Shown here: positions 15,588 through 40,561 of the stretch, piece by piece | Position numbering within the stretch: position 1 is the first letter of the stretch | Layout of the letters: the number at the start of each line of letters is the position of its first letter | IMG/VR virus record: IMGVR_UViG_3300045996_002337 | Coordinates: 124,001-188,000 of that record | DNA length: 64,000 bases | Strand: one strand, 5' to 3' | Program-made: the position numbers and the translations under genes | Notes under the pieces: model-generated | Database searches by the model: none | Told to the model about the DNA's origin: nothing | The model's input: only the letters and a program-made list of their open reading frames with translations

Positions 15588-16484
15588 TTACACCGCCATA
15601 TCCATCTTGATTGCAGGCTGAGAAACGTAATTTTCCAGTGCGATGTCAGCCATCGTGAACTTTTCGATGTCGTCGATGTCTGGGTTCAACTTCAGAACTG
15701 GGGGCAGTCCGGGGATGCGAAGCAGCTGCTCACGCGCACCGTCAAGGTGGTTGTTGTAGAGGTGCACGTCGCCCAGATTCATGATCAACCGATCCACAGC
15801 TAGGCCAGCTACTTGGGCGAGCATGTGTGTAAACAGCGCATAAGATGCGATGTTAAACGGAAGCCCGAGCATCGTGTCAACCGAACGCTGGTACATTTGG
15901 CATGAAAGCTTGCCCTTTGCGACGAAGAACTGCGCCATCATATGGCAAGGCGGCAATGCCATTTGATCGAGCTCGCCAGGATTCCAAGCGCTGATGATCA
16001 TGCGCCGGTCGGTGTTGTTCGTCTTCAGCTTCTTGACTAGCTCGAGCAGTTGATCAACCTCTTCTTCAAGGTGCCAAACATGTCCGTCTTTGTCTGGAGT
16101 TGCAACATGGCGACCTGTCCACCAATGACGCCATTGAACGCCATACACGCGACCAAGGTCACCATCGAACCGCGCCTTCGGTTTCCAGTAGTCGGCCTGC
16201 GCGTTGCCCGTCCAGATCGTAACTTTTGATGGATCGCGGGAGCCGTGTAGAATCTCTGCCAGCCGCCGCTCATCGCCCGATCCTTCGATAAACCAAAGTA
16301 GTTCAGACGTAACCGCCTTCCATGCCAGTTTCTTGGTGGTCATGGCAGGGAACCCGGCTTTCAGGTCGATGTCGAGGGTACGGCCGAACAGGGCGCGGGT
16401 GCCCACGCCGGTGCGATCGGTGCGATCATCGCCGTTTTCGAGAATATCTCTAACCAGAGACAAATATTGATTTTCCCAGGTCAT
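15588..16484 (-). CDS. thyA: Thymidylate synthase
   Basis: DRTGVGT, MALPPCH, YQRSVD, GLPFNIASY (Asn, dUMP-specific). Confidence 0.97.
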   Translation of the reverse strand: MTWENQYLSLVRDILENGDDRTDRTGVGTRALFGRTLDIDLKAGFPAMTTKKLAWKAVTSELLWFIEGSGDERRLAEILHGSRDPSKVTIWTGNAQADYWKPKARFDGDLGRVYGVQWRHWWTGRHVATPDKDGHVWHLEEEVDQLLELVKKLKTNNTDRRMIISAWNPGELDQMALPPCHMMAQFFVAKGKLSCQMYQRSVDTMLGLPFNIASYALFTHMLAQVAGLAVDRLIMNLGDVHLYNNHLDGAREQLLRIPGLPPVLKLNPDIDDIEKFTMADIALENYVSQPAIKMDMAV

Positions 16485-27160: not shown

Positions 27161-27319
27161 TCACTTAGGTTGACAAGCCACACCACCACGCTGGTAATGA
27201 GCAGGTGTACACGGTTCCATGAATTTTTTCACGGGCTGACTAGCACAGGTTGAAAGAACCGCAAGCGCAACTGCTGCGATCACGAACGAAAGCCAAACAG
27301 GAAATTTTGGTGGACACAT
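27161..27319 (-). CDS. Small secreted/lipoprotein-like peptide (52 aa)
   Basis: Manual translation MCPPKFPVWLSFVIAAVALAVLSTC...; AGGAG RBS. Confidence 0.55.
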   Translation of the reverse strand: MCPPKFPVWLSFVIAAVALAVLSTCASQPVKKFMEPCTPAHYQRGGVACQPK

Positions 27320-27355
27320 TACTTTTTCTCCTCGCACGCGATTTTATAGCATTAG

Positions 27356-27405
27356 TTGACAAATAGCGGTTAACTCATTATAACCATTGACAAATAAGAA
27401 GTACA
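27356..27405. promoter_or_regulatory. Overlapping bidirectional promoter: plus TTGACA-N17-TATAAC; minus TGTACT-N17-TATAAT
   Basis: Both -10 boxes use the TTATAA palindrome. Confidence 0.6.
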
Positions 27406-27420
27406 TAGGCCCGGGCAACA

Positions 27421-27447
27421 AAAAGCCCAGGCTTGACCTGGGCTTTT
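27421..27447. terminator. Bidirectional intrinsic terminator
   Basis: aaaagcccagg-cttga-cctgggctttt. Confidence 0.8.
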
Positions 27448-27538
27448 TTGGTTCGACTTACTGTCGCTTCGCGCGATCCTTAAGTATTTCCCTCGCCTCT
27501 ATCATGGCAGCCACTGTCTCCTCATTTGGTGAATCGGA

Positions 27539-27877
27539 TCACAAAATCTTTGGGGCGGCACAAACTACGCCACCGTGCTTGACGGCGTTGAGGATGTCAC
27601 GGACACGTTCAGCACCGACGTCGGACATGGCGCAGGCCAGCGGCGTCGCCCCATCGAGCATGGGGTGTGGCTGCCGTAGCCACATAGCCGCCTCTTCATC
27701 AGACTCGAAGGTGTCACGTGCCATCGCGTCAAGCTCGAGTAGGCGCAGCATGCGGTCCATTCCCAAGACATCCGCTTGGCTTTTCTTTTGACGCCATCTA
27801 CCGAGAAGATATCCTGCCCCACCAGCTAGTAAAATCGGGATGAAGAATCCAAACACATAGTGGGCATTTTCCATCAT
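27539..27877 (-). CDS. Xre/MbcA/ParS-type antitoxin C-terminal domain (DUF2384) with an N-terminal TM helix
   Basis: ARDTFESDEEAAMWLRQPHPMLDGATPL...GAERVRDILNAVKHG. Confidence 0.8.
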   Translation of the reverse strand: MMENAHYVFGFFIPILLAGGAGYLLGRWRQKKSQADVLGMDRMLRLLELDAMARDTFESDEEAAMWLRQPHPMLDGATPLACAMSDVGAERVRDILNAVKHGGVVCAAPKIL

Positions 27878-28353
27878 GACTTTTCACCAGTGCGTCTATC
27901 TTCACCCTTCCATTTCAGACGTTCGATTTCAGTCACTCTTGCACGTAGCTCGCTGGTAGAGAAGCTGTGCTTGCGGGTGTTGAAGTAAAACTCCATGTGC
28001 GTGAGGTCGTGCCCCGTGAACGGCTTGCCCTTGTATTCGTCACCCAAAATTCGAACGTCAATGGGGTACGCCAAAAGAATATCAAGAAGGTCCTTCTCAG
28101 TCGCGTACACGACGATTTCGTCAACATACTTGCAGGCCTCGAGTTGCACAAAGCGCTCGAAGACTGACTGGACTGGCTTGTTCTTTTCCGGCCGATCAAT
28201 CGTTGGATCCGTCTGCAGCCCCACAATGAGGAAGTCGCACTGACGCCTTGCTTCACGAAGCATCATGATGTGACCTGCATGGAAGAGGTCGAAGCAAGAT
28301 GCGGTGAAGCCGGTTCTTACGTGTTCAGCTGGGCGTTCCGATAATTTCGCCAT
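27874..28353 (-). CDS. Cytidylyltransferase (TagD/RfaE-II-like)
   Basis: GFTASCFDLFHAGH (HxGH), LIVGL, ER...CKYVDEI, GDEY. Confidence 0.88.
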   Translation of the reverse strand: MAKLSERPAEHVRTGFTASCFDLFHAGHIMMLREARRQCDFLIVGLQTDPTIDRPEKNKPVQSVFERFVQLEACKYVDEIVVYATEKDLLDILLAYPIDVRILGDEYKGKPFTGHDLTHMEFYFNTRKHSFSTSELRARVTEIERLKWKGEDRRTGEKS

Positions 28354-29057
28354 TTGATTCCCTGTTCAATATGTTGAATTGCCTTGTTCACGTCATCACC
28401 TGGAACTTGAAGATCCCATCGCGTAACGTTTGACCATGCTCGTTCTTCACCAGTGATGGAAAGGAGACGGTTGGTGTGAATATGAATAAGCTTCTCGGCC
28501 GCATCATGCATGTCCATTGATGTCAGCAGCGCAGAAACGTTCTGTGAGGATTTGGCGATATTGTGAAGCGCATTACGAATGTCCAGCGCGGTTCGGCGGT
28601 TCAGCCGGGCGATGCGCTCTGATTCAACGGTGTGTACGTAGATCTTGAAGATTTCCCATCCATTGTCTCTACACAGCTGCTCGTACATCTCGAGACCCTT
28701 CGGTTCCAAGATCACGATCGGCGCCCTGTCACCGTGCATCTTACCTTGCATTTCTTTATGCGTCACGCCGTAACGAACGCCCTGAAATGTGATGAGCTCT
28801 GCGAACTCACCGTTCTTTTCCATTGCCAACGATTGCTCAACGCTAATGAAGTTGTAGTCAACTCCTTCCACCTCACCATCGCGCCGCGCACGTGTAGTGG
28901 TGCTGACGATGCGCGAGAACATTGGCTCGAACTGATAGGCCTGCCCTCGCTTTGCCACGGCAGCAGGATCCGGTTTCGTCATCGCATCAAGCAGGTACGA
29001 CTTGCCAGAGCACGTAGGGGCCGTCATTGTGACGAGAGTAGGTTTGTCAAATTTCAT
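28317..29057 (-). CDS. gmk: Guanylate kinase-like NMP kinase
   Basis: APTCSGKS, STTTRARRDGEVEGVDYNF, GVRYG. Confidence 0.75.
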   Translation of the reverse strand: MKFDKPTLVTMTAPTCSGKSYLLDAMTKPDPAAVAKRGQAYQFEPMFSRIVSTTTRARRDGEVEGVDYNFISVEQSLAMEKNGEFAELITFQGVRYGVTHKEMQGKMHGDRAPIVILEPKGLEMYEQLCRDNGWEIFKIYVHTVESERIARLNRRTALDIRNALHNIAKSSQNVSALLTSMDMHDAAEKLIHIHTNRLLSITGEERAWSNVTRWDLQVPGDDVNKAIQHIEQGIKWRNYRNAQLNT

Positions 29058-29104
29058 GATGCAATTATACCAAAGTTAGATCTTGTTACAAATGAGTCGT
29101 AGGT

Positions 29105-30238: not shown

Positions 30239-30252
30239 CGCTTTCTTACGCT

Positions 30253-31467
30253 TTATTCAATGTCTGGCTGGGTATCACCTGCGAGAAATTTTCGAACTTG
30301 TGCTAGGGTTGAGTTAACGCAAGGTTGCATGTCCGTGTACACGTATCGCCCGCAGCGACCGATGAAGTGAATGCCATCCGCCCTGGCCCGCTCACGGTAT
30401 TTCTTGTAGAGCTCACGGTTCGGGTCAACAGCATGAGACGTCTTCACTGGATAGTAGCGCTCCATGCTGTTGTCCTTGTAGTCGCACGGCTCTTCGATGG
30501 TAAGCGTCGTCCAGTGCGGATTGCCGCCGTGCCCCGGCAGCTGCTTCCACTCGGTGGCGCGGGTGTGCGGACCATCATGTGTGAAGTTGACGACTGGAGC
30601 GGAGAGCGCTTTCGGCAGCGGCACGCTGTACGTGTGGCACTTGATCGACCGCCAAGGTAGCTCGCCCATGTCGCAGTTGTAGTACGTGTCGATCGGCTCG
30701 GACGTGAAGACGGCGTCGAAGTTCACGTTGTCCCATTCGCGGTCGATGACGCATGGATACGAGTACGTCGCACCGTATTGCGGCAGTTGCTTCCGCTCGG
30801 TGCTGAGCTTGAGCGTGATGTTCGGGTGATCGAAGATGCGCTTGAACATCGCCGTGTACCCATCCTTTGGCAAGCACTGGTGCTTGTCCTTCGGGAAGTA
30901 GTAGGGGTCGTAGTCGCTCTTCGTGGGAATTCGTGCAGCCACAGATGTGGGCAAATCACTCAAATCCATGCCCCACATCTTCTTGGTGTAGGGCGCGAAG
31001 AACAGCTCGCAAAGCTCCTTGCCAACCGATGCCTCAACGTGCTGGCGCGAGTTGGTGATCTTGTCGTGCTTCACCAACTTTTTCTCAAAGAACTCCGTAA
31101 ACTGCCAGTCATCGAGGTAGTTCGGTCCATACGCGGCGACGATTTCATTCCCGAAAACCGTCTCAATGGTGCCTCGGTTGATTGGAAGCGGAACGTGCTG
31201 ACCATCTGGAAGCTGCGCGTGAACCCAGTGCTTGTACGGCAGCCACTCGGTGAAACGCGAAGCCCATTCCTGGGCGACGTCGTTGCTTCCGTGCCAGAGA
31301 TGGGGGCCATACTTATGCACCCGAATTCCATGCTCATTCACGAAATCATACGCGTTACCAGCGATGTGGTTGCGTTTGTCAATCACAAGCACCTCCCACC
31401 CTGCTTCTGCTAGCTCACGAGCAACAACTGCGCCGGCAAAACCAGCGCCAACAACCAAAGCTTTCAT
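30253..31467 (-). CDS. glf: UDP-galactopyranose mutase
   Basis: GAGFAG FAD motif, HIAGNAYD, HKYGPH, RYYP, GRCGRYVYTDM. Confidence 0.92.
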   Translation of the reverse strand: MKALVVGAGFAGAVVARELAEAGWEVLVIDKRNHIAGNAYDFVNEHGIRVHKYGPHLWHGSNDVAQEWASRFTEWLPYKHWVHAQLPDGQHVPLPINRGTIETVFGNEIVAAYGPNYLDDWQFTEFFEKKLVKHDKITNSRQHVEASVGKELCELFFAPYTKKMWGMDLSDLPTSVAARIPTKSDYDPYYFPKDKHQCLPKDGYTAMFKRIFDHPNITLKLSTERKQLPQYGATYSYPCVIDREWDNVNFDAVFTSEPIDTYYNCDMGELPWRSIKCHTYSVPLPKALSAPVVNFTHDGPHTRATEWKQLPGHGGNPHWTTLTIEEPCDYKDNSMERYYPVKTSHAVDPNRELYKKYRERARADGIHFIGRCGRYVYTDMQPCVNSTLAQVRKFLAGDTQPDIE

Positions 31468-31736
31468 TCTTTTCCCTTGTAAATGTGAATTGCGAAAGGA
31501 ACCTCATCGTTACAACTGATTTCCCAGAAGGCCACAAATCGCTGGGCCTTCATGTTGTATGTATGCTCAAGAACGTGCAACGAATAGCTGACATTGGTCG
31601 GGACGAGGCCCTTCAAAACCCCATGCCAAAACGATGCCAAATGCGATTCTTGTATATCGCGATATGGGCAGCCCGCAACATGGGTTTCGTAAAACTCAAG
31701 CAGAGCTTCAATTTGTTCTGGGGTGATATCGGTCAT
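31464..31736 (-). CDS. Hypothetical protein
   Basis: 90 aa, coupled between the glycosyltransferase and glf. Confidence 0.55.
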   Translation of the reverse strand: MTDITPEQIEALLEFYETHVAGCPYRDIQESHLASFWHGVLKGLVPTNVSYSLHVLEHTYNMKAQRFVAFWEISCNDEVPFAIHIYKGKE

Positions 31737-32917
31737 TTGTCAGCTTCCAAAATGGCGCGCAGTTCTTCCTTCTGCAGATCTTTGCTGAGGTGGTGCGTCT
31801 TGTACAGCGCGACCTTCTGTGCATCTGCAATGTCACGAAGCTCTTCATCGCTGAGGTTCACGAGATCGCTTGCCTTCAGGCCGTAGTACTCGTACTCGGC
31901 GCCGTAGTAGACACGCAGCTCCTTCTCTTCACCAATGAGGATAGATCCTGCATCAGCACACTGCAGAGGACGAGCGCGCCACCAGCCGGACCCAGCATGT
32001 TCGTAACCAGGCATCAAGCAGCCCCAGTCACGTGTGATGATTTCCACCATCTGATCTTCAGTCAGGCGTTTCTGTGTTTCAGCTTTCGACCCGTAAAGGT
32101 CAACAGCCCAACCACCGATCGTGCCTTCTTCGTCGTTCTTCGGGTTGCCCGTGTAGCCTTGCTTCTTCAGCCACTTCTGGGTCTTCGATTGAACGAGGGA
32201 GGCGAAGTTGAAGCGACGTTCCTTTTCAGGCAAACGAATCATTTTATAAATCGCAGCTGCATCGTCACCAAAGTTCAGCGTTGATTTCCAAGTCGGATCT
32301 TCCGAACCTTCATGAATCAAATCACCGATCTTTCGGTTGCGGTGGTACGGGTTCGGGTTGTAGACGAAGAGGCGGTCGCGTGGATAGGCGATCTTGTCGA
32401 ACAACAGGTGAGGACCGTAGTTCTCGTCGTCACCAACGTGCTCAGTGCGGAAGGCGCTGATCAGCATGCGATTCTTCATCGCGGTGATCGTAGCAATCGC
32501 GGCCATGAACTTGTCCTCATACGGCTGCACGACCTCGAGCGTCTTCTTGTTCACGTCGAGAATGAACTGCGCGAAGAGCTCATTCGGCTTCCCATCGCAC
32601 TTTGCCACGCCCTTGAACAGGTCAGGAACTTGCCAGTCATCGAACGCGAGGATGCACTTGGGATGTTGACTGATTGCCCAGAGGCCCTCGTAAACGGTGG
32701 TTGCCACGAGCTGACGAGGACCGGCAATGAACACGATGACTTCATCGTAGCCGCTCAGGTCTTCGCCGAGTGTGACTTGACGCTGCTCAACCTCGTGACC
32801 CATGTCAACGAGGCAGTTGAACAGAGAGTAGTGCGAAGGCACCACCTTCAAGTTTTGACGAAGGTAGAACTTGCGGGTGCACTGATTTTTGTTGAAGCCG
32901 GTGATGAGAATTTTCAT
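31733..32917 (-). CDS. GT-B glycosyltransferase resembling T4 DNA beta-glucosyltransferase
   Basis: MKILI...VVPS...LFNCLVDMGHEV...YDEVIVF and RARPLQCADAGSILI align by eye to T4 BGT. Confidence 0.65.
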   Translation of the reverse strand: MKILITGFNKNQCTRKFYLRQNLKVVPSHYSLFNCLVDMGHEVEQRQVTLGEDLSGYDEVIVFIAGPRQLVATTVYEGLWAISQHPKCILAFDDWQVPDLFKGVAKCDGKPNELFAQFILDVNKKTLEVVQPYEDKFMAAIATITAMKNRMLISAFRTEHVGDDENYGPHLLFDKIAYPRDRLFVYNPNPYHRNRKIGDLIHEGSEDPTWKSTLNFGDDAAAIYKMIRLPEKERRFNFASLVQSKTQKWLKKQGYTGNPKNDEEGTIGGWAVDLYGSKAETQKRLTEDQMVEIITRDWGCLMPGYEHAGSGWWRARPLQCADAGSILIGEEKELRVYYGAEYEYYGLKASDLVNLSDEELRDIADAQKVALYKTHHLSKDLQKEELRAILEADK

Positions 32918-33114
32918 TTGTTACCTAGTCGTTTGAGAAGTTCTTCACGGATGCCGTCTTGGTCGAACTCATACTTATTCGCGTGAAACCTGCAGTAAGG
33001 ATCATAGTGGTTGCAAGCCACAAATGTTTCAAACAGATCAATCAGCGCAGAATCTGAAAGAGCTTTCAGCTCTTCAAGGGACATCTGGTGATGATTGAAC
33101 ATCAGAAAAACCAA
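32914..33114 (-). CDS. Small hypothetical protein
   Basis: 66 aa coupled ORF. Confidence 0.5.
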   Translation of the reverse strand: MVFLMFNHHQMSLEELKALSDSALIDLFETFVACNHYDPYCRFHANKYEFDQDGIREELLKRLGNK

Positions 33115-33314
33115 CCCATGAATGAACCAAGTGGTGGAATGAAGATGCCGACCACGCGCACGATGCCAATGCCCGTGGAAAGCGCGTCAGACATGCCGAT
33201 AAGATCAGCGATGTTCAGGCACCACCCGACGATACCAAGCACCGCTAGCGTTAGCCAAAACAAAAGCGCCACAAGGCCAATTTTTTCATAGCGCCGCAAT
33301 CCAGTTCGCTTCAT
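33102..33314 (-). CDS. Small membrane protein
   Basis: Two hydrophobic helices. Confidence 0.6.
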   Translation of the reverse strand: MKRTGLRRYEKIGLVALLFWLTLAVLGIVGWCLNIADLIGMSDALSTGIGIVRVVGIFIPPLGSFMGWFF

Positions 33315-33385
33315 TTTCTTCCTTAAGGATGTTATGAGGTCTATTGTAACCCGACTTTGCCAGAGCCGATACCATATTTTATAGG

Positions 33386-33892
33386 TCAGAGCGCCCGTTT
33401 AAGTTCATCAATCAACGCGTACGGCTCTTTCGATTTGAACCGTTTTGCGAATTGGGGGTGATAGACCTTCACGTACTCAGATGTAGGAGCGTTGCGCCGC
33501 ACCCACATCTCGGCTTTGCCGCCGAGACAAATGATCGCTGGTTTACCGGCCATCAGATCCTGCACATAAACAGGGTCAAGCGTGGTCCCGTCTGCAAGTT
33601 CAGCGTTAAACCACACCAACTTTTCTTCCTCTATGCCCGCCTCGACAAGTTGCTTGTTGAGCCACAGGCTCGAGTTCTTTGTGCTGTAAAAGGGGGTGTG
33701 ATGGTAACCTGCAGTTGTTGGTCTACCTGGCCCGGGCGTGTCACCAATTACGATCGCCTTCGTTAAACCATTGTACTGTCGGTGCAGGGCCCGCAGGTAT
33801 ATATGCTTGCGAATCTGCAGCTGATCACGAATGCCCTTCTGAATTTCTGGTGTCAACTTGTCGAACGCCGCCCCAAAAATACTAGCGCCCAT
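33386..33892 (-). CDS. Uracil-DNA glycosylase superfamily protein (family 4-like)
   Basis: IVIGDTPG...PF...SS.WL...WFNA...ICLG.KA...YHPQF..R. Confidence 0.65.
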   Translation of the reverse strand: MGASIFGAAFDKLTPEIQKGIRDQLQIRKHIYLRALHRQYNGLTKAIVIGDTPGPGRPTTAGYHHTPFYSTKNSSLWLNKQLVEAGIEEEKLVWFNAELADGTTLDPVYVQDLMAGKPAIICLGGKAEMWVRRNAPTSEYVKVYHPQFAKRFKSKEPYALIDELKRAL

Positions 33893-34595
33893 TTTTTGCT
33901 CCAAGGGTGGTCATGCCAATGTTGAAAGAGGACAAGCTCGTGTTGATCGTGGCCCGCTTCGAGATAGCTTTTTCTTCAGAGCGAGGGTCATCGTTGATCG
34001 AGAGCTTCACGAAATCATGAAGACGATCATATTCGGCGTCCTCAACCCCCAATGTGGTCTTCGCGGCGGGGCGAAGCTCTTCCTTGATGATGTCGGCCTT
34101 CTTGCAGATCTGCCGCTGGAGCTCTTGGCATTCCTCAACAATTGCGGCGATCAAAGTTTTGAGGTCGGTGATCTCGTCGAGGTTAAAGTACGCGGAAGAA
34201 TACTCATTATCCAAGTACTTGATTTCATTGGGTGTGAGCTCGTGATTTTTGATTTGGTGTTCGGGAGCGAGCGACACACTGATGCCGTATTGGGCAAGGT
34301 GATCGCGTACGATTTGTCCGCTGCCAATGAAATCCAACACACGGTACATGCCTGCGAAGCTGTCAAGGAGGGCCTCCATGCGGCCCTTCGAGTTGGGCGT
34401 GGGCCAGCCGCCACCCAAATAATAAAGCGCGTCGACGGCTTTCTTCACATCTGCGTGTGAGACGCCTGCTGAATAAACGGCGATGTCAGTGAGCGCGCGG
34501 TACTGGCTATAGTGCTCAGTAATTTCTGCGCGAATCGCAACCGCCGTTTTGATCAGGCCGAGCGCCTCTTCAGCTTTCGCAACGAGTTTAGTCAT
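33882..34595 (-). CDS. Helical hypothetical protein
   Basis: MTKLVAK start with GGAG RBS. Confidence 0.6.
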   Translation of the reverse strand: MTKLVAKAEEALGLIKTAVAIRAEITEHYSQYRALTDIAVYSAGVSHADVKKAVDALYYLGGGWPTPNSKGRMEALLDSFAGMYRVLDFIGSGQIVRDHLAQYGISVSLAPEHQIKNHELTPNEIKYLDNEYSSAYFNLDEITDLKTLIAAIVEECQELQRQICKKADIIKEELRPAAKTTLGVEDAEYDRLHDFVKLSINDDPRSEEKAISKRATINTSLSSFNIGMTTLGAKNGR

Positions 34596-34644
34596 TGTGG
34601 CTCCAGTAAAAGAACATTCTAACACCTGTTGCCACAATTGTACA

Positions 34645-34860
34645 CTATCGCCTAATCAGATCCTGCGCAGCCACGTCAATCTTCAGGAGGTGAAGCTTTT
34701 CACAAAGCTCCTCGTCGCTGTGTATGTAAAGGAACTTGTCGGCGAGCAGTTCGTGCTTTGGATCCGCGTGATGGTAAATGAACGTGATATAGCCCTGGCT
34801 CTGACTCTCGTTCAACAGGCTCCGAATCCCGTGGGGATTTGAGATGGCGATGACCTTCAT
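34645..34860 (-). CDS. Hypothetical protein
   Basis: 71 aa. Confidence 0.5.
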   Translation of the reverse strand: MKVIAISNPHGIRSLLNESQSQGYITFIYHHADPKHELLADKFLYIHSDEELCEKLHLLKIDVAAQDLIRR

Positions 34861-35282
34861 AGCGGCTTGTCATTGACGAGGACGTCGACTTCGAACTTTT
34901 TCTGTTCCATGTCGTAGTAGAAAATGTTCACTGCGTCGATGCGTGCATTCGTGCTGTAACCACCGTCGGTGGTGTCCCGCTGGACGAAGCTGTCGCGAAA
35001 TTGATCGATGGCCTTTTTATCCATGCCAAGCTCAGAGAGGTGCTGCTCCAATGCTTGCTCCTCAAGGCGCCGATCGTAGAGCCCAGAGTACTCTGGGGTG
35101 CGCATGAACGCCAGGCCATAGAGGTGACCCTTCATCTCGTTGAACTGCAGACGCGGCTTGTAGAAGCACGACTCCGTCGAATAGGCATCTGCATCGCCAT
35201 GCATGAAGCCCACCTCGATCTCGTACACGTCCTTATAGGTAGGAAGCTCGACCTCTTTCCCAATCGTGAGCTTAACGGTCAT
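34857..35282 (-). CDS. Hypothetical protein
   Basis: MTVKLTIG start. Confidence 0.55.
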   Translation of the reverse strand: MTVKLTIGKEVELPTYKDVYEIEVGFMHGDADAYSTESCFYKPRLQFNEMKGHLYGLAFMRTPEYSGLYDRRLEEQALEQHLSELGMDKKAIDQFRDSFVQRDTTDGGYSTNARIDAVNIFYYDMEQKKFEVDVLVNDKPL

Positions 35283-35859
35283 GGAGCGCCTCGCTAAGAA
35301 TTTCATCCCTGCTTCGGAAACTGCCGTCTCTTGCGGTGACACAGATCATTCTCTTATCGAGGATGATTGACCTGTTAAAGGCAGCGACGAAGAGCTCCTG
35401 TTCATCACGACGCTTTGTATCATCAAAGCTTTCACCATCTGAAACGAAGTGCTTGCTGCGGTCAAAATCCTCAACGAGAAGAATGAGGCGAACGAGAGAA
35501 TCATTTAATTGGTGTACGCGCTCAAGCTCGAAGACGTAGTCGCCTGAGTAGCCGCGATAGAGAGGTGCGTAGACTGCTTCACCAAGATGCCAGCGGTCAA
35601 AGATGATGCTCGCACCTGACTGCGCAAGGATCATCGAGTGTGAAAAGCTGGCGCGCTGGTAGAGGTACGCCCCATTACGTGATTGACCTTGACCTTCAAA
35701 TTCCTTGTTCCACCGCTCGGCCGCCTCCTCGTAAACCTTCAGAATTTCTGGTTTGCCGAAATGAATGACCTGGAAGAAGCCTTCGCGCTGCTTAATTCCG
35801 TCGATGAGTGTTGACTTACCGAGACGGTCAAGCCCCTCAATTGCATATACTGATGGCAT
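35272..35859 (-). CDS. Thymidylate kinase-like dNMP kinase
   Basis: IEGLDRLGKST P-loop, FDRWHLGEAVY. Confidence 0.8.
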   Translation of the reverse strand: MPSVYAIEGLDRLGKSTLIDGIKQREGFFQVIHFGKPEILKVYEEAAERWNKEFEGQGQSRNGAYLYQRASFSHSMILAQSGASIIFDRWHLGEAVYAPLYRGYSGDYVFELERVHQLNDSLVRLILLVEDFDRSKHFVSDGESFDDTKRRDEQELFVAAFNRSIILDKRMICVTARDGSFRSRDEILSEALHDR

Positions 35860-36149
35860 TAAACCTCCAAAATAATTTGATAACGATTCAAGATTGCAAC
35901 GGTCCGCTCGGAGTCGTCCACCTGAGTAACATGGAGGTCAACGTCATCGGCCGCCCTCGCCTGAAAATCCTTATCGGTGATCTGCTCAATGGTGCCCATG
36001 AGCTTCATCGACGCGCGCTGGTATGTGCCTGGACCGAGGCGCGTCACATACAGCATCGCTGAGATTACCTGAAGTTCCTCAACGGTCATTCGAAGAGTGA
36101 ACTCACCCTCTCCGGCTGGCTCGTCATATTCACGTGAGCAGATATTCAT
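35859..36149 (-). CDS. Hypothetical protein
   Basis: 96 aa coupled ORF. Confidence 0.55.
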   Translation of the reverse strand: MNICSREYDEPAGEGEFTLRMTVEELQVISAMLYVTRLGPGTYQRASMKLMGTIEQITDKDFQARAADDVDLHVTQVDDSERTVAILNRYQIILEV

Positions 36150-36346
36150 TGCTTTGTCTTAGGTGTGTTTGCAAGGAGTGATTGTAACACGCGGTGCTGT
36201 GGGACGTCGATCTTTTCCCGTTCAACAAACAGGGCGCCGTCGTACAGCATTGGCTGGCCAATGAACGTAGACCAGTCATGGTTGAGTGATTCCGCGTTGA
36301 ACGTTGCATGCATCGCGGAACGACGAGCAGTGCGTGATTTCATCAA
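36146..36346 (-). CDS. Hypothetical protein
   Basis: 66 aa coupled ORF. Confidence 0.5.
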   Translation of the reverse strand: MMKSRTARRSAMHATFNAESLNHDWSTFIGQPMLYDGALFVEREKIDVPQHRVLQSLLANTPKTKQ

Positions 36347-37416
36347 ATGAATCCCGGGCCGCGTTTGCGACGTTGATTGTCGCTAGGTTGCTGGCAAAAG
36401 AGCTCTGCCAGAGTAACGCGCGTCTTGCCTTCTGGCACCTGCCCCTTGCCAGTTTCCTTGATGATTACTTCCGCTTCCGAGACGGTCAGAGGCCGAAATT
36501 CAACGACGTCAAAACAGCGGCCGGGCCGCATGAGAGCCGGGTCGATATCTGAGATGTTCGGCAGGTTGGTCGAGAAGATCATCTTCTTGTCGGAAGCCGA
36601 GATCAGACCATCCGACACGTTCAGAAATTTGTGCATCATGGTGTTGCCGTCTGCGCGTGATTGGAGGAACGCGTCTGCATCTTCCATCACGAGAAAGCGA
36701 CTGTCATCATCAATGAAGCCAGCGAACAGACCGTCGTCCATCATCACCTTCTCATCGTACGCGACCTTTGCATTTCCACCGGAGCGGTGGATCAGGTTCT
36801 TGATGAAGGTCGTCTTGCCAGTTCCCGGTGGGCCAATCAAGATCAGGACGCTGGCATCCGAATTCAGGTAATCGTCGATGTAGTCGATCAGGTTCTTCTG
36901 GATCCACGGATACGCACCGTTGATGGCCGGGCGGTAGTTCAGTGGAACGCGAATCGTATCACCTCGGGTGGAGTAGACCCACTCGATCAGGCTTTGGGCC
37001 CGCCGGAAATGTTCGTCAAAGCAACTAACCCACCGCTTAACCCACTCCATATCCCCGATATGCTCAACTGCAAGTTTGCCACGGGAGTGAGTGATGCGAA
37101 GAATTCCAGAGCTTTCAACGATCACCACACGCTGGGCGGAGTAGAAGGTGAATTTCTTCGCGCGATCAGGAACCCACTCTGCGAGAGAGAAACCTGCCGG
37201 TACGAGCCAGGTAACGTCGATCTGGATCGTAGCGGCACCACTCAGGTGCCGCTGGCGAAGGACATCCGCCAGAACCCATTCCTCTGAGCCGTAAACGCCG
37301 AGCACGACTTCGTTTCGTTCGACTGTTCTCGGCGCAAAAATGTGGGCGTCGTCCATTGCAGTGTCGTGCTGCTCAGGCAGCGACTCGAAATAATCTTGAT
37401 GGGCTGAATAGTTCAT
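36343..37416 (-). CDS. AAA+ ATPase (BCS1-like)
   Basis: GPPGTGKT, LVMEDAD, LNVSDG, FSTN...DPALMRPGRCFD. Confidence 0.88.
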   Translation of the reverse strand: MNYSAHQDYFESLPEQHDTAMDDAHIFAPRTVERNEVVLGVYGSEEWVLADVLRQRHLSGAATIQIDVTWLVPAGFSLAEWVPDRAKKFTFYSAQRVVIVESSGILRITHSRGKLAVEHIGDMEWVKRWVSCFDEHFRRAQSLIEWVYSTRGDTIRVPLNYRPAINGAYPWIQKNLIDYIDDYLNSDASVLILIGPPGTGKTTFIKNLIHRSGGNAKVAYDEKVMMDDGLFAGFIDDDSRFLVMEDADAFLQSRADGNTMMHKFLNVSDGLISASDKKMIFSTNLPNISDIDPALMRPGRCFDVVEFRPLTVSEAEVIIKETGKGQVPEGKTRVTLAELFCQQPSDNQRRKRGPGFI

Positions 37417-37434
37417 AATGAGATTATAACTCGT

Positions 37435-39186
37435 TTAATTATCACCAAGCTGCGAAGTGAAGGATGTTTTGAACTCGTCTGCCCAGGCGTTCGTCTTCGA
37501 GGTCCAGAGCCGCTGAATGCCGGCGTCCAAACAGTACGTGGTGGCCCAATCCGTTGCTGAACGTACGGAACGTCCGGCGCCCTGCGTAACCTTCATCAGC
37601 GCGGTCAGTGAGTAGATGTCAGGGTACACGTTCAGGATATGTGCAACCCGCTTGTCGCCGAGTGATCCGAACGGGGCTTTACACAGAATCTGAAAGCGAG
37701 AAAGATCCCCTGGCAAGTCAATACCTTCAAAGCCTGATGGCGTCAGCAGAACAGCCGGCCCTCGTGTGTACGCCTTAAACTCCTCAAGCACATCAGCCAA
37801 CTTCTCGCCACGTTGCTGTTCAAACACCCGGTAGTTTCCGCCCATTTGGCGAAGCGTTTCGGAAACCGATTGAACGATCACAAAAGACGGAGCTAGAATG
37901 ATGCCACGTTCCCCCTTCTTCGTATGGTGATCCACAATTTGATAGACGGAAGCACACAGCTTTTTAATGGTGGCCGGGTCCTTCATGGTCGTGTAGTTTA
38001 ACGCCTGCGTCTTGAAAAAGATAACCTTCTTGTTTTCTGGCGGAAACTGCGGATCAAGCTTGATGAACTTTGTTTCACCTGGCAGCGTCATCGTTCGCTT
38101 AGCAAATACGTCGCTGATTGTCGCTGACATGAGGAGATTGTGATCCGCGTTGTCGAGGGCCTCGAACATGTCACCAACAAAGATCGGCTTGACAGAGACT
38201 TCGTGCTCATGTTGCCCCTTCTTGGTGTCCTTTGCTTTGTGCTCGAACACGTGCGGATAACCAAAGATGATCAGGTCGTCGATCTTGCAACCGAGGTTGT
38301 AGTACTTCTTTGAAAGCTTTGAAAGCGTAAGGTACTTCTTGTGATTGCGATTGTTGCGATCAGCTTCACGGGCAGCTGCCTCCGAGATTTGCTTGTACGT
38401 GGCATGCAGCGTCTGGAGGTACGCCATGTACGTTTGGTCAGTGATCTTACCAGCGATCAGGTGTTCGCGAATTGTCTTCAGGTTCTTGAAGATGTCCGTG
38501 TTACCGACTGATAGTTGCTCACTGATTTCCTCGGCGAACTGGGCCAGCCGCTTCTCGGAGAAGAAGATGGCGTTGTGCTCAACGAACAGATCATTAATGA
38601 GGTGCGCTTCGTCAAACACACAGACGGACCGCTTTTCCATCGGGTGAGTAGAGTACATACGATCGAGAAAGTACCACGAGTAGTTCGTGATCAGGTGCCG
38701 TGAGCTGTTCTTCTTCGACCGTGAACGTTTGTACTCGCAGGAATCGCAGTGTGCCTGGATGATGGAGTCCATTGCCTGCTTTTGAAACATCACGATCGAG
38801 CATGACTCAGCGTTCTGCGGTTCCTCGGGCACCGACAGGGCAGAACACTCGTAGTTACCGGCACCTTTGATGATGTGGAAGATGTTGTCGTCAGGCGCCG
38901 AATCATCTACGAAAGTGTCATGATACTGGTGCGCAAGCACGTTCGTCGCTGTGAGGAGAAAGGAAGCGCCTGCCGATGTGCCAGGATGCTTAACTGTGTG
39001 GATCACATCTGCCACAATTGCACCAATGATCGACTTACCAGTTCCGGTTGGAGCGGACAGAATCACATTCTTCACCTTCTCATCGAGAAAGGCAATGAGA
39101 ATTTTGTCAATGTGTTCAACCTGGCGATCACGCGGTTTGAACCCGATGCGATCATAGGCTTCTAGAATTTGTTTTTCGTATCTCAT
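37435..39186 (-). CDS. dinG: DinG/YoaA-family SF2 helicase
   Basis: APTGTGKS, DEAH, MSAT, EGIDLPG, QGAGRSVRS. Confidence 0.88.
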   Translation of the reverse strand: MRYEKQILEAYDRIGFKPRDRQVEHIDKILIAFLDEKVKNVILSAPTGTGKSIIGAIVADVIHTVKHPGTSAGASFLLTATNVLAHQYHDTFVDDSAPDDNIFHIIKGAGNYECSALSVPEEPQNAESCSIVMFQKQAMDSIIQAHCDSCEYKRSRSKKNSSRHLITNYSWYFLDRMYSTHPMEKRSVCVFDEAHLINDLFVEHNAIFFSEKRLAQFAEEISEQLSVGNTDIFKNLKTIREHLIAGKITDQTYMAYLQTLHATYKQISEAAAREADRNNRNHKKYLTLSKLSKKYYNLGCKIDDLIIFGYPHVFEHKAKDTKKGQHEHEVSVKPIFVGDMFEALDNADHNLLMSATISDVFAKRTMTLPGETKFIKLDPQFPPENKKVIFFKTQALNYTTMKDPATIKKLCASVYQIVDHHTKKGERGIILAPSFVIVQSVSETLRQMGGNYRVFEQQRGEKLADVLEEFKAYTRGPAVLLTPSGFEGIDLPGDLSRFQILCKAPFGSLGDKRVAHILNVYPDIYSLTALMKVTQGAGRSVRSATDWATTYCLDAGIQRLWTSKTNAWADEFKTSFTSQLGDN

Positions 39187-39497
39187 AGACCCTTCATGAG
39201 GTCACGCAGGACCTCATCGTCGATTTCTTTGGCGATTTCAGTTGACAGTTTGGACAGGATTTCTTTCTCGGCCTCAGCCCATGACTTTCGTGGACCTTTC
39301 CACTTGTGCATGTGCCCGCACTGCTCTAGATACATTTTACCGATGACGCGTTCCGAGTCTGGCACCATGAGAGATTCAATGGCCATTCGCCTGGCACGGT
39401 GCATGGCCATTTGCGTGTCTTCGCTTGGGCGATTGTTCCGATCGTTAAGTACCTCGGCGGTCTCCAACATCAGCTTTTCAAAACGCGTCATCGTCAT
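39183..39497 (-). CDS. Hypothetical protein
   Basis: MTMTRFEK start. Confidence 0.5.
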   Translation of the reverse strand: MTMTRFEKLMLETAEVLNDRNNRPSEDTQMAMHRARRMAIESLMVPDSERVIGKMYLEQCGHMHKWKGPRKSWAEAEKEILSKLSTEIAKEIDDEVLRDLMKGL

Positions 39498-39499
39498 TC

Positions 39500-40465
39500 T
39501 CAGTCCTCTTGGCCAAACAGGGCGTGCATGGCTTCTTCGTCTTTTCCAAGCAAGGCTTTCACACACGTCTGCCAGTACGGTGAGAGCATGGCAAAGGCAC
39601 CAACTGCTTCAAAGTCAAAGTCGTCAGGAGCGCCTGCAGCCTGCCACGCTGCCTCAACACCTGCAAGGCCAGTAAGAATTTCGTCGTCGAAACGATCCAT
39701 TGGAATCATCTCAAGGTCAAATGCCTTCTCGTTGGCGATGATCTTTTCGGCCATCTCAAAGTGACGATCATAGATGTGCATCGAGCCAGCGTTGTGGAAA
39801 TAATGACCAAGGCCCAGATCAGGATACATTTCCTTCAGCTGCACCTGCATGCACTCTTGAAGCATTGTAAACTGAAACACGTCGTTTGTAAACCCGAGAA
39901 TGATGTCATTCGAGCGCATGTTACAGATCATGTGCAGCTTGTTCTCGCGAATGAACCAGTGCAGGGTCAAGGTGCACGGAACGTCCTTGTTGCCATCGTG
40001 ACGGTCGGCCGGCATGTGGATGTTCATGATGGCCTGGCGGGAATCCTTGTCCTTCTTCAGGAGCTCAACGGTGCTGTTCCATTGTGACAGCCCAGACACG
40101 TTCATTCGCTCATCATGGCCAAAAAGGCGGTGACCGTAGTTGGAGTTGATCGTGCCCTTTTCGTAACCTGCGACGTCACCCGAGTTCGTGATGTTCGCCC
40201 AGAACTTTGAGTAAGGGAGGATGCCCTTCGGGTCGTTTGAACCTGTGAGGTACCAGATGAACTCACCAAGGAGGTACTTTGTGTTCGTGTTACGCTCAGG
40301 AAATGTAATCACCCGATTACGCGCGGACTGCAGGGTGATGTTGTAGTTCAGCAGCTCTCTGGTGGTTGTACCACGGGGATGAGCAACCATCCCGTACTCC
40401 ATCAGCTGGGCCAGGCAGGTGCGAAAATCGTTGTTGAGATAACCTGTTTGAATGTGTTCTGTCAT
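39500..40465 (-). CDS. 42: dCMP hydroxymethylase-like (T4 gp42 family)
   Basis: TS fold with DVPCT, MRSNDIILGFTND (Asp, dCMP-specific), GSMHIYDRH. Confidence 0.8.
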   Translation of the reverse strand: MTEHIQTGYLNNDFRTCLAQLMEYGMVAHPRGTTTRELLNYNITLQSARNRVITFPERNTNTKYLLGEFIWYLTGSNDPKGILPYSKFWANITNSGDVAGYEKGTINSNYGHRLFGHDERMNVSGLSQWNSTVELLKKDKDSRQAIMNIHMPADRHDGNKDVPCTLTLHWFIRENKLHMICNMRSNDIILGFTNDVFQFTMLQECMQVQLKEMYPDLGLGHYFHNAGSMHIYDRHFEMAEKIIANEKAFDLEMIPMDRFDDEILTGLAGVEAAWQAAGAPDDFDFEAVGAFAMLSPYWQTCVKALLGKDEEAMHALFGQED

Positions 40466-40519
40466 GAGTTCTCCTTCTTGAATGTTCAATTGTAACTTAT
40501 TGGGAACCTGCCCAAGATC

Positions 40520-40527
40520 CATAAATA
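40520..40527 (+). promoter_or_regulatory. Late promoter CATAAATA
   Basis: 34 nt upstream of the fibre gene. Confidence 0.6.
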
Positions 40528-40561
40528 GGTTGGTAAGCTTACCTGTCACAGGACGACGAAA

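What the first reader, a model, noticed from the sequence alone, without database searches (positions are those of the whole stretch)
30253..40465. Candidate new DNA hypermodification: furanose (galactofuranosyl?) glycosylation of hydroxymethylcytosine
Seen: a T4-BGT-like glycosyltransferase (31733-32917) is translationally coupled, via one 90-aa ORF, to a UDP-galactopyranose mutase (30253-31467). A dNMP kinase (35272-35859) and a gp42-type dCMP hydroxymethylase (39500-40465) lie upstream. The hydroxymethylase has GFTND (Asp, dCMP-specific), while a separate true ThyA has PFNIA. Established: T4 makes hm-dCMP, phosphorylates it and glucosylates it in DNA with BGT; Glf makes UDP-furanose sugars, normally for cell-wall glycans; arabinosylated cytosines are known in RB69-like phages. 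Inference: Glf supplies UDP-Galf (or UDP-Araf) to the DNA glycosyltransferase, giving a furanosyl base I do not know from any described phage, as armour against restriction and CRISPR.
Basis: partly seen in the sequence, partly recalled or inferred. Interest (0 to 1): 0.92.

Follow-up and report, generated by a model that had tools for sequence, protein, structure and literature searches.

The report
Predicted furanose-sugar coat on phage hydroxymethylcytosine
A giant uncultured phage carries a gene set that most likely replaces cytosine in its DNA with hydroxymethylcytosine and caps it with an unusual five-membered-ring sugar, a modification not chemically described that can be tested in cultured Aeromonas phages carrying the same genes.

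Summary
The window is part of a 349,660-bp uncultured jumbo-phage contig. Gene 30253-31467 is a full-length UDP-galactopyranose mutase homolog (Glf). Gene 31733-32917 has no Pfam or PDB sequence match, but its confident model is a GT-B glycosyltransferase (GT) whose best solved neighbour is T4 beta-glucosyltransferase (BGT). The thymidylate-synthase (ThyA) homolog at 39500-40465 has the T4 gp42 hydroxymethylase signature. It lacks the D169N signature of the 5-hydroxycytosine (5hoC) synthases described in 2026.

Comparative evidence supports a functional link:
- GT and Glf are adjacent in 29 of 34 assessable viral loci, in either gene order.
- An hmC-type synthase lies upstream in 32 of 32 assessable loci.
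- The family is almost absent from cellular genomes.
- Cultured Aeromonas phages (25, Aes508, phiAS4) and Erwinia phage FBB1 carry the pair. These Aeromonas phages also carry gp42, and phage 25 was listed in 2010 as lacking glucosyltransferases.

Most likely the DNA carries galactofuranosyl-hydroxymethylcytosine, but there is no chemical evidence. The concept is partly anticipated: RB69 and DLP3 DNA carries arabinofuranosyl-5hoC, and a phage Glf was proposed to supply UDP-galactofuranose in Rhizobium phage RL38J1. Verdict: partly supported, a new variant of a known kind.

The parts
39500..40465 (-). Thymidylate-synthase-family enzyme, predicted dCMP hydroxymethylase (5-hydroxymethyl-dCMP synthase).
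   Evidence: PF00303 E 8e-25. Best PDB sequence hits are the CMP hydroxymethylase MilA (3.4e-28) and T4 dCMP hydroxymethylase (1.2e-18). In E. coli ThyA numbering it has L143D, N177D and a retained D169, plus INSNYG as in T4 gp42. The 5hoC synthases have MRSQN and FNTFYG at the same sites. A Shine-Dalgarno site precedes the ATG at 40465.
35272..35859 (-). Thymidylate-kinase-like nucleotide kinase, a candidate kinase for the modified dCMP.
   Evidence: Pfam PF02223 scores 21.2 bits, below its cut-off. PHROG_761 'thymidylate kinase' gives E 1.4e-11. It is conserved at 53-62% identity in the same position in all jumbo-phage relatives. Similarity to RB69 gp45 and RL38J1 gp214 is limited to the P-loop, although those occupy the analogous position.
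33386..33904 (-). Small basic protein with a uracil-DNA-glycosylase-superfamily fold; its role in the pathway is unknown.
   Evidence: Conserved between the kinase and the GT in the jumbo-phage relatives. Weak PF03167 hits in 3 of 6 members, best E 3.7e-4. Model pLDDT 83. The top 27 Foldseek PDB hits are all UDG-superfamily proteins, best 1vk2 at E 1.4e-5, though TM is only about 0.45. pI 9.4.
31733..32917 (-). GT-B fold glycosyltransferase of a phage-restricted family, the predicted DNA (hmC) furanosyltransferase.
   Evidence: No Pfam, NCBIfam or PDB sequence hit. Model pLDDT 82.3, pTM 0.83. T4 BGT is the top PDB fold hit, followed by other GT-B enzymes, T4 AGT and the phage HY126 DNA GT. The family has 623 representative clusters and only 3 hits in cellular genome collections, all phage-like MAG contigs. 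It lies next to Glf in 29 of 34 assessable loci.
31464..31736 (-). 90-aa acidic ORF that bridges the GT and Glf through two ATGA overlaps. It is specific to this contig and is probably not a core part.
   Evidence: ATGA overlaps at both ends. No family hit. No homolog in any related locus. In relatives the GT-Glf gap ranges from 0 to about 615 nt.
30253..31467 (-). UDP-galactopyranose mutase homolog (Glf), the predicted supplier of the UDP-furanose donor.
   Evidence: PF03275 E 7e-48. TIGR00031 scores 269 bits, below the equivalog cut-off of 303.75. Full-length alignment with solved mutases; the GxGxxG, YT..W, R.PT, WRS, YYPV and GR..Y.Y.DM blocks are conserved.
28317..29057 (-). Guanylate-kinase-like protein, conserved downstream of Glf in jumbo-phage relatives; a possible second nucleotide kinase.
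   Evidence: PF00625 E 2.7e-14. Found at 36-52% identity after Glf in L005-L013.
27874..28353 (-). Cytidylyltransferase-like nucleotidyltransferase; a possible accessory of the pathway, role unknown.
   Evidence: PF01467 E 5e-14. NCBIfam matches are RfaE-domain-II-like and TagD-like. It recurs beside the ThyA homolog, GT and Glf in distant loci L026-L030 and L033 at 58-63% identity.
15588..16484 (-). Conventional thymidylate synthase (context). It shows that the homolog at 39500-40465 is an additional, specialised copy.
   Evidence: Motifs PPCH, QRSVD and LPFNIA. It forms its own clade in the tree.

Best explanation
This is a cytosine hypermodification pathway of a jumbo phage.

1. The ThyA homolog (39500-40465) converts dCMP to 5-hydroxymethyl-dCMP.
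2. The phage kinase or kinases together with host enzymes raise it to the triphosphate, and the polymerase incorporates it.
3. Glf (30253-31467) isomerises a host UDP-pyranose, most likely UDP-galactopyranose, to the UDP-furanose.
4. The adjacent GT-B glycosyltransferase (31733-32917) transfers that furanose to the hydroxymethyl group of hmC in DNA.

The product would be galactofuranosyl-hmC, which shields the genome from restriction enzymes and CRISPR nucleases.

**Shown:** gene identities, signatures, fold and conserved linkage.

**Inferred:** the acceptor (hmC in DNA), the donor sugar, the anomeric linkage, and whether modification is complete.
For: - **Mutase.** Glf is a full-length mutase homolog with conserved FAD and substrate motif blocks.
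- **Fold.** The GT model is confident, and its best solved neighbours are four T4 BGT entries. T4 AGT and the phage HY126 DNA glycosyltransferase are also among the hits.
- **GT-Glf linkage.** The two genes are adjacent in 29 of 34 assessable IMG/VR loci, with gaps of 0-615 nt. They are also adjacent in Aeromonas phage 25 and its relatives, Erwinia phage FBB1, phage C48C1 and a MAG contig. The gene order is reversed in the Aeromonas and Erwinia phages, so adjacency has survived rearrangement.
- **Link to an hmC synthase.** A ThyA homolog lies 0.4-7.6 kb upstream in 32 of 32 assessable loci. All have the D...C, MRSND, xND signature of T4 gp42.
- **Same GT, different synthase lineage.** Jumbo relatives L007, L008 and L010 carry a GT about 74% identical to the window's but a T4-clade gp42 in place of the window-type enzyme. 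This argues that both synthase types make the same acceptor.
- **Deoxy specificity.** The positions that make MilA CMP-specific are Ser and Arg here, as in T4 gp42 (significance of these residues from my own knowledge of the MilA literature).
- **Use with another furanose donor.** A homolog of this GT (E 2e-19) sits inside an RB69-type arabinose/5hoC cluster in Morganella phage Rgz1. UDP-arabinofuranose is a demonstrated donor in that type of system, shown with DLP3 gp76 and gp77 (PMC13326640).
- **Variable sugar partner.** In the most divergent GT clade, one locus (L035) has an NAD-dependent sugar epimerase/dehydratase about 1.4 kb downstream of the GT and no Glf.
- **Phage-restricted.** A scan of 185,579 species' genomes found 3 hits, all on MAG contigs with phage-type gene content.
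- **No alternative GT in phage 25.** It has gp42, gp56 dCTPase and denB, and was listed as lacking glucosyltransferases (PMC2993671).
Against: - There are no chemical data.
- The GT has no significant sequence similarity to BGT. TM-scores are moderate (0.54-0.61).
- The GT and its homologs are acidic (pI 5.5-5.9), whereas T4 BGT has pI 9.05.
- In the tree the window-type ThyA homolog clade lies outside the T4 gp42 clade. It joins the 5hoC clade weakly (81/68, flagged as possible long-branch attraction), so the hmC assignment for this contig rests on signature residues and on its relatives.
- Glf scores below the NCBIfam equivalog cut-off, so its substrate could differ.
- In Rgz1 the homologous GT may act on a sugar acceptor rather than on the base.
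- No dCTPase was found in the 64-kb window, although most of the 350-kb genome is unseen.
Confidence: 0.55

Rival explanations
1. The pathway has the same layout, but the acceptor is 5-hydroxycytosine, linked by an ether bond as in Rhizobium phage RL38J1 and RB69. The ThyA homolog would then be a flavin-dependent 5hodCMP synthase.
For: RL38J1 combines a Glf with galactosylated 5hoC (PMC13326640). The window-type ThyA homolog clade groups weakly with the 5hoC synthases. A homolog of the GT occurs in a 5hoC/arabinose cluster.
Against: - The published diagnostic D169N is absent. The window has MRSND, where RB69 gp48, Rgz1 gp33 and RL38J1 gp216 have MRSQN.
- INSNYG matches T4 gp42 and not the FNTFYG of the 5hoC enzymes.
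- No homolog of the base-proximal 5hoC transferase family (RB69 gp46:47, RL38J1 gp215) was detected.
- Close relatives with about 74% identical GT carry T4-clade gp42.
Confidence: 0.12
2. The Glf-GT pair does not act on DNA. It would glycosylate a host envelope glycan, a small molecule, or a phage or host protein, for example to block superinfection. Its proximity to nucleotide-metabolism genes would be incidental.
For: The classical role of Glf is cell-surface glycan synthesis. The GT is acidic, unlike BGT. There is no sequence-level link to any DNA glycosyltransferase. Glf also occurs in phages that lack this GT, such as Streptococcus phages and gut contigs.
Against: - An hmC-type synthase lies upstream in 32 of 32 assessable loci across very different phage lineages.
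- DNA glycosyltransferases dominate the top fold hits.
- The family is nearly absent from cellular genomes, where envelope glycosyltransferases would be expected.
- A homolog is embedded in a DNA arabinosylation cluster.
Confidence: 0.18
3. The DNA is glycosylated on hmC, but the sugar is not galactofuranose. The mutase homolog would act on another UDP-sugar, such as UDP-arabinopyranose or UDP-GalNAc, giving a pentofuranosyl or N-acetylhexofuranosyl base.
For: Glf scores below the equivalog cut-off and carries two insertions relative to solved mutases. The GT family is also used in an arabinofuranose system. Some bacterial mutases accept related UDP-sugars (own knowledge).
Against: UDP-galactopyranose is the widely available host substrate, and no phage genes for making another UDP-pyranose lie beside the module. 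The motif blocks around the substrate-binding arginines and tyrosines are conserved.
Confidence: 0.12

Closest known systems
T4 hydroxymethylcytosine glucosylation (gp42 dCMP hydroxymethylase, gp1 kinase, alpha- and beta-glucosyltransferases using host UDP-glucose)
   Same: A ThyA-family enzyme with the L143D, N177D and retained D169 signature. Post-replicative sugar transfer by a GT-B enzyme whose nearest solved fold is T4 BGT. The genes lie among replication and nucleotide-metabolism genes.
   Different: The donor is not taken directly from the host, because a phage Glf is coupled to the GT. The GT has no significant sequence similarity to BGT or AGT and is acidic. The kinase is thymidylate-kinase-like. 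The window's synthase forms a clade separate from T4 gp42.
Rhizobium phage RL38J1 / Pootjesviridae galactosyl-(glucosyl)n-5-hydroxycytosine system (PMC13326640)
   Same: A phage-encoded UDP-galactopyranose mutase homolog, 31% identical to the window's, is proposed to supply UDP-galactofuranose for DNA glycosylation. The system also contains a ThyA homolog and a thymidylate-kinase-like kinase.
   Different: RL38J1's synthase has the D169N 5hoC signature and the window's does not. Its base-proximal transferase gp215 is unrelated by BLAST to the window GT (E 0.48). In RL38J1 Glf lies far from the transferases, whereas here it is fused into one translationally coupled module.
RB69 / DLP3 arabinofuranosyl-5-hydroxycytosine system (PMC13326640; PMC6024577)
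   Same: A furanose sugar on a C5-modified cytosine. The phage makes its own UDP-furanose donor. A synthase, kinase and GT are clustered. A homolog of the window GT sits in such a cluster in Morganella phage Rgz1.
   Different: The acceptor is 5hoC, made by a flavin-dependent synthase. The donor is built by an arabinose-5-phosphate isomerase, phosphatase, kinase and uridylyltransferase route rather than by a mutase. RB69's own transferases are not detectable homologs of the window GT.
Bacterial UDP-galactopyranose mutase (Glf) in cell-surface galactofuranose synthesis
   Same: Same fold and motifs; the alignment with solved mutases is full length.
   Different: The context is a phage DNA-modification cluster with no lipid-linked glycan genes. 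The score is below the NCBIfam equivalog threshold.

Membership tests
UDP-galactopyranose mutase (PF03275 / TIGR00031) | GLF domain above the Pfam gathering score, plus an N-terminal FAD-binding Rossmann motif | tested here: met
   PF03275 scores 163.5 bits against a cut-off of 26.3. NAD_binding_8 gives E 2e-17. The protein starts with GAGFAG.
UDP-galactopyranose mutase (PF03275 / TIGR00031) | Score above the NCBIfam equivalog cut-off (same function expected) | tested here: not met
   TIGR00031 scores 269.2 bits against a cut-off of 303.75.
UDP-galactopyranose mutase (PF03275 / TIGR00031) | Conserved substrate- and flavin-site blocks, including those that hold the two essential arginines | tested here: met
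   The alignment with 3hdq and 2bi7 conserves YT..W, R.PT, (Y/W)RS, YYPV and GR..Y.Y.DM. Which residues are essential comes from my own knowledge.
UDP-galactopyranose mutase (PF03275 / TIGR00031) | Interconverts UDP-Galp and UDP-Galf | not testable with these tools
   An enzyme assay is needed.
T4 beta-glucosyltransferase family | Detectable sequence homology to T4 BGT | tested here: not met
   phmmer against PDB found no hit at E <= 10. hhalign of the 25-sequence profile against T4 BGT gave probability 24% over 58 N-terminal columns only.
T4 beta-glucosyltransferase family | GT-B two-Rossmann fold with BGT as the closest structure | tested here: met
   Foldseek hits to 1nzd, 1qkj, 1j39 and 1bgt rank 1, 2, 5 and 6, with E 3.5e-7 to 1e-5 and TM 0.48-0.61.
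T4 beta-glucosyltransferase family | Catalytic base equivalent to BGT Asp100 | tested here: inconclusive
   An invariant DDW motif (residues 93-95) follows the fourth N-domain strand. No residue-level structural superposition was available.
T4 beta-glucosyltransferase family | Transfers sugar to hmC in duplex DNA | not testable with these tools
   An in vitro assay is needed.
dCMP hydroxymethylase (T4 gp42-type 5hmdCMP synthase) | ThyA fold with a catalytic Cys, N177D (dCMP specificity) and L143D/E (water access) | tested here: met
   PF00303. The DVPC and GFTND motifs align with T4 DFMC and GFRND.
dCMP hydroxymethylase (T4 gp42-type 5hmdCMP synthase) | Asp retained at position 169, which distinguishes it from 5hodCMP synthases | tested here: met
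   The window has MRSND, as do T4 gp42 and phage 25 gp42.
dCMP hydroxymethylase (T4 gp42-type 5hmdCMP synthase) | Falls within the T4 gp42 clade | tested here: not met
   The window-type clade of 6 rows is separate from the 22-row gp42 clade, and its placement is unresolved.
5-hydroxy-dCMP synthase (RB69 gp48 / DLP3 gp80 / RL38J1 gp216) | D169N substitution (PMC13326640) | tested here: not met
   The window has Asp at that position. The three reference enzymes aligned here have Asn.
Pootjesviridae Gal-5hoC system | Base-proximal transferase of the RL38J1 gp215 / RB69 gp46:47 family | tested here: not met
   BLASTP of the window GT against gp215 gave E 0.48. tblastn found no hit between the window GT and the RB69 cluster region L003. 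The gp215, gp46:47 and Rgz1 gp32 proteins do match one another.
T4 gp1-type dNMP kinase | Sequence membership of the kinase at 35272-35859 | tested here: inconclusive
   The only matches are thymidylate-kinase-like: 21.2 bits against a cut-off of 27, and PHROG_761 at E 1.4e-11. No gp1-family sequence match to it turned up in the family scans.

The most novel reading that the evidence does not exclude
A base that has not been described, 5-(D-galactofuranosyl-oxymethyl)cytosine, replaces cytosine in a widespread clade of roughly 350-kb jumbo phages, in marine T4-like phages and in cultured Aeromonas and Erwinia T4-like phages. It would be installed by a phage-restricted GT-B family specialised for UDP-furanose donors. 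That family has been coupled in different lineages to a mutase (Glf), to an arabinofuranose pathway, or to an epimerase, making it a modular way to diversify the sugar coat of phage DNA.
Probability: 0.4. Interest if true: 0.75.

Novelty: new variant of a known kind. Interest (0 to 1): 0.62.

Why it matters
Sugar-modified cytosines decide whether a phage escapes restriction enzymes, type IV systems and CRISPR nucleases. They also affect whether its DNA can be sequenced, cut or engineered.

If confirmed, this module would add a new sugar chemistry to the hmC branch: a hexofuranose supplied by a phage mutase. It would define a new family of DNA glycosyltransferases with about 600 sequence clusters. 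It would also explain how Aeromonas phages long listed as 'gp42-positive but without glucosyltransferases' protect their hmC DNA.

The prediction is cheap to test. Cultured phages exist with the module (phage 25, Aes508, phiAS4, FBB1) and without it (31, 44RR).

Tried and rejected
- **Nucleotide search.** Megablast of the region against 50,697 phage records found nothing, so there is no close cultured relative.
- **Sequence annotation of the GT.** Pfam, NCBIfam and PDB phmmer gave nothing. PHROGs gave only an unnamed family.
- **BGT homology by profile.** hhalign of the GT profile against T4 BGT was not significant, so membership of the BGT family is rejected at the sequence level.
- **Match to the RL38J1 transferase.** BLAST against RL38J1 gp215 found no similarity, so this is not a copy of the Pootjesviridae system.
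- **5hoC hypothesis.** I considered it seriously after finding PMC13326640 and rejected it as the leading reading on the D169 test.
- **Promoters and terminators.** The scan of 27000-41000 was at chance level and uninformative.
- **Kinase homology.** Comparison with RB69 gp45 and RL38J1 gp214 showed P-loop similarity only.
- **Literature.** Searches for galactofuranosyl-hmC, or for Glf in Aeromonas phage DNA modification, found no such report in the held library.
- **Remaining ORFs.** A Pfam scan of 30 further large ORFs elsewhere in the window found no dCTPase and no second glycosyltransferase.

Full report
**What is there**

The window is a 64-kb piece of IMGVR_UViG_3300045996_002337, a 349,660-bp viral contig, so this is a jumbo phage. 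Megablast finds no close relative among 50,697 phage records. From 40465 down to 27874 a run of minus-strand genes encodes, in order:

- a thymidylate-synthase (ThyA) homolog (39500-40465)
- a small ORF
- a DEAD/DEAH-box helicase
- an AAA ATPase
- small ORFs
- a thymidylate-kinase-like kinase (35272-35859)
- several unknown ORFs, including a conserved 172-aa protein (33386-33904)
- a 394-aa protein with no family match (31733-32917), the glycosyltransferase (GT) discussed below
- a 90-aa ORF (31464-31736)
- a UDP-galactopyranose mutase homolog, Glf (30253-31467)
- a GGDEF protein
- a guanylate-kinase-like protein
- a cytidylyltransferase-like protein

The junctions orf66/GT, GT/orf90 and orf90/Glf are all 4-nt ATGA overlaps. 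A conventional ThyA with the QRSVD...LPFNIA motifs is at 15588-16484.

**The mutase**

The Glf product aligns over its full length with solved bacterial mutases. The best is Deinococcus radiodurans 3hdq at E 8e-70. The FAD motif and the conserved substrate-site blocks are present. It passes the Pfam threshold by a wide margin but falls short of the NCBIfam equivalog cut-off (269 versus 303.75 bits). The fold and chemistry are secure; the exact UDP-sugar is not.

**The glycosyltransferase**

Sequence methods give nothing. I built a 25-sequence alignment from relatives in public collections. It gave an AlphaFold model with mean pLDDT 82.3 and pTM 0.83. Foldseek against the PDB ranks T4 beta-glucosyltransferase (BGT) entries first (1nzd E 3.5e-7; 1j39 TM 0.55/0.61). 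Other GT-B enzymes follow, along with T4 alpha-glucosyltransferase (AGT) and the phage HY126 DNA glycosyltransferase.

A profile-sequence comparison with T4 BGT is not significant: probability 24%, N-terminal 58 columns only. The protein and its homologs are acidic (pI 5.5-5.9) while BGT has pI 9.05. So it works like a GT-B nucleotide-sugar transferase and resembles BGT in fold, but it is not a demonstrable member of the BGT family.

The family is coherent and of moderate size. It has 623 representative clusters at E <= 1e-3 among 1.84 billion representatives. A pattern scan of one genome for each of 185,579 bacterial and archaeal species found three hits, all on MAG contigs with phage-type gene content.

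**The base-modifying enzyme**

- RB69 and DLP3 carry arabinofuranosyl chains on 5-hydroxycytosine (5hoC), not on hmC.
- The 5hoC is made by flavin-dependent ThyA homologs that can be recognised by a D169N substitution (E. coli numbering).
- Rhizobium phage RL38J1 makes galactosyl-glucosyl-5hoC and encodes a Glf that the authors propose supplies UDP-galactofuranose.

I therefore aligned the window enzyme with T4 gp42, Aeromonas phage 25 gp42, RB69 gp48, Morganella phage Rgz1 gp33, RL38J1 gp216 and the window's own ThyA.

| Enzyme group | Motif before Cys | Central motif | Motif at 167-169 | Position 177 |
|---|---|---|---|---|
| Window ThyA homolog | DVPC | INSNYG | MRSND | D (GFTND) |
| T4 gp42 (hmC) | DFMC | INSNYG | MRSND | D (GFRND) |
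| 5hoC synthases | E-Y-P-C | FNTFYG | MRSQN | D |

The window enzyme thus has L143D, a retained D169 and N177D, as T4 gp42 does. The two positions that make MilA prefer CMP are Ser and Arg here, the deoxy-type residues (alignment; significance from my own knowledge).

One caveat comes from a maximum-likelihood tree. The window-type enzymes (six rows) form their own clade outside the 22-row T4 gp42 clade. They join the 5hoC clade weakly (81/68), and the tool flags this as a possible long-branch artefact. For this contig the hmC assignment rests on signature residues, not on clade membership.

**Comparative genomics: the main test**

A scan of IMG/VR with the GT returned 36 loci, and I searched them with all the cluster proteins.

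- **GT-Glf adjacency.** Glf lies directly after the GT in 29 of the 34 loci with enough downstream sequence. Gaps range from 0 to about 615 nt.
- **The exceptions.** The five exceptions all belong to the most divergent GT clade (36-39% identity). In the two I looked at, L035 and L040, a cytosine-C5-methylase-like gene follows the GT. L035 then has an NAD-dependent sugar epimerase/dehydratase, and L040 has a GT8-like gene upstream.
- **Upstream synthase.** A ThyA homolog lies upstream in all 32 loci with enough upstream sequence. Every one carries the hmC-type signature.
- **Two synthase lineages, one GT.** Within the jumbo-phage clade, L007, L008 and L010 keep a GT about 74% identical to the window's but carry a T4-clade gp42 instead of the window-type enzyme. 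Two different synthase lineages serve the same transferase, which argues that both make the same acceptor.
- **Cultured phages.** The pair is adjacent in 19 Aeromonas and 2 Stenotrophomonas T4-like phage records (phage 25, Aes508, Aes012, phiAS4, IME13 and others), in Erwinia phage FBB1 and in phage C48C1. In the Aeromonas and Erwinia phages the gene order is reversed (Glf then GT), so adjacency has survived rearrangement.
- **Phage 25 in detail.** Its gp42 has the hmC signature. It also has gp56 dCTPase and denB. The other module-positive isolates have gp42 that is 85-99% identical to phage 25's. Phage 25's record marks both module genes as 'not conserved in 44RR'. The 2010 T4-family review lists phage 25, 31 and 44RR as having genes 42 and 56 but no glucosyltransferase (PMC2993671). 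The module has therefore gone unrecognised, and phages 31 and 44RR provide a natural module-negative comparison.

**A link to furanose donors**

In Morganella phage Rgz1 a homolog of the window GT (23.5% identity over the full length, E 2e-19) sits inside an RB69-type cluster. Its neighbours are an arabinose-5-phosphate isomerase, an NDP-sugar enzyme, a 5hoC-signature synthase, a homolog of the base-proximal arabinosyltransferase, and a kinase. This GT family is therefore used in two settings where the phage makes a UDP-furanose. That is suggestive, not proof. In Rgz1 the enzyme might extend a sugar chain rather than act on the base.

**Most likely mechanism**

1. dCMP is converted to hm-dCMP by the ThyA homolog.
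2. It is phosphorylated and incorporated into DNA.
3. A host UDP-galactopyranose is converted to UDP-galactofuranose by Glf.
4. The GT transfers the furanose to hmC in DNA.

I put about 0.55 on this general scheme and about 0.4 on galactofuranosyl-hmC specifically. The rivals are:

- a 5hoC acceptor (0.12), disfavoured by the D169 test
- a non-DNA target for the Glf-GT pair (0.18), disfavoured by synteny, fold neighbours and phage-restricted distribution
- a different furanose (0.12)

**Other parts of the cluster**

The 172-aa protein between the kinase and the GT is conserved in the jumbo clade and is basic. It has GDTPGPG and HPQ motifs. Its model (pLDDT 83) matches only uracil-DNA-glycosylase-superfamily structures among the top 27 PDB hits, although TM-scores are modest at about 0.45. 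Its role is unknown; it could serve repair or act as a base-flipping accessory.

The 90-aa ORF that couples the GT to Glf is specific to this contig. The cytidylyltransferase-like gene recurs beside the module in distant marine-type loci, at higher identity than the GT itself.

**Novelty**

Searches of the held literature found no report of galactofuranosyl-hmC, and none of Glf acting in an hmC phage. The general idea does exist for the 5hoC systems: a phage-made furanosyl donor for DNA glycosylation. This finding is therefore a new variant of a known kind. It combines an hmC-type acceptor, a mutase-coupled donor and a new GT family. It is directly testable in cultured phages.

Noticed in passing
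window 29105-30238 (-): A GGDEF diguanylate cyclase with a MASE11-like N-terminal region lies between Glf and the guanylate-kinase-like gene. It is present only in this contig and absent at that position in all jumbo-phage relatives. A phage-borne c-di-GMP synthase is unusual.
   Followed up: partly
window 27874-28353 (-); L026-L030, L033: A cytidylyltransferase-like gene (RfaE-domain-II-like and TagD-like) recurs next to the ThyA homolog, GT and Glf in distant marine-type viral contigs at 58-63% identity. That is more conserved than the GT (45%). It may be a further step of the modification pathway.
   Followed up: partly
window 33386-33904 (-): A conserved 172-aa basic protein has a UDG-superfamily fold and sits inside the modification cluster. 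A homolog (43% identity) exists in Ralstonia jumbo phage RsoM2USA.
   Followed up: yes
window 47130-51963 (-): The complete PrkA - DUF444 (YeaH-like) - SpoVR (YcgB-like) gene triad, a bacterial stress and sporulation module, is encoded on a phage with very strong Pfam scores (E 5e-152, 8e-113, 8e-139).
   Followed up: no
window 53969-58953 (-) and 14464-17564 (-): A set of RNA-repair and NAD/ADP-ribose-related genes: Ro60/TROVE with a vWA domain, NADAR, Thg1-like tRNA-His guanylyltransferase, Tpt1/KptA RNA 2'-phosphotransferase, a circularly permuted YpsA SLOG protein and a Macro domain. Together they suggest a counter-defence or RNA-repair arsenal.
   Followed up: no
window 4896-10379 (-): An 1827-aa ORF with no Pfam match. 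It lies next to a DUF4376 protein and other unknown ORFs.
   Followed up: no
L035:3045-5523; L040:7205-10254: In the most divergent GT clade, Glf is absent. A cytosine-C5-methyltransferase-like gene follows the GT. One locus then has an NAD-dependent sugar epimerase/dehydratase, and the other has a GT8-like gene before the GT. This may reflect a different sugar supply for the same transferase family.
   Followed up: partly
L043 (Morganella phage vB_MmoM_Rgz1) 7001-8068: An RB69-type arabinose/5hoC cluster contains an extra GT homologous to the window GT, in addition to the RB69 gp46:47-type transferase. The 2026 paper on these systems does not mention this phage or its genus.
   Followed up: partly
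L007, L008, L010 versus window, L005, L006, L009, L011: Within one jumbo-phage clade, two unrelated lineages of hmC-signature ThyA homologs occupy the same cluster position: a 247-aa T4-type and a 321-aa window-type with a C-terminal extension. This looks like non-orthologous replacement.
   Followed up: partly
L045 (MAG labelled Acinetobacter sp.), L046 (Omnitrophota), L047 (Bacteroidetes): Contigs binned into bacterial MAGs carry this phage cluster and are probably phage sequence mis-binned into those genomes. The host labels should not be trusted.
   Followed up: no
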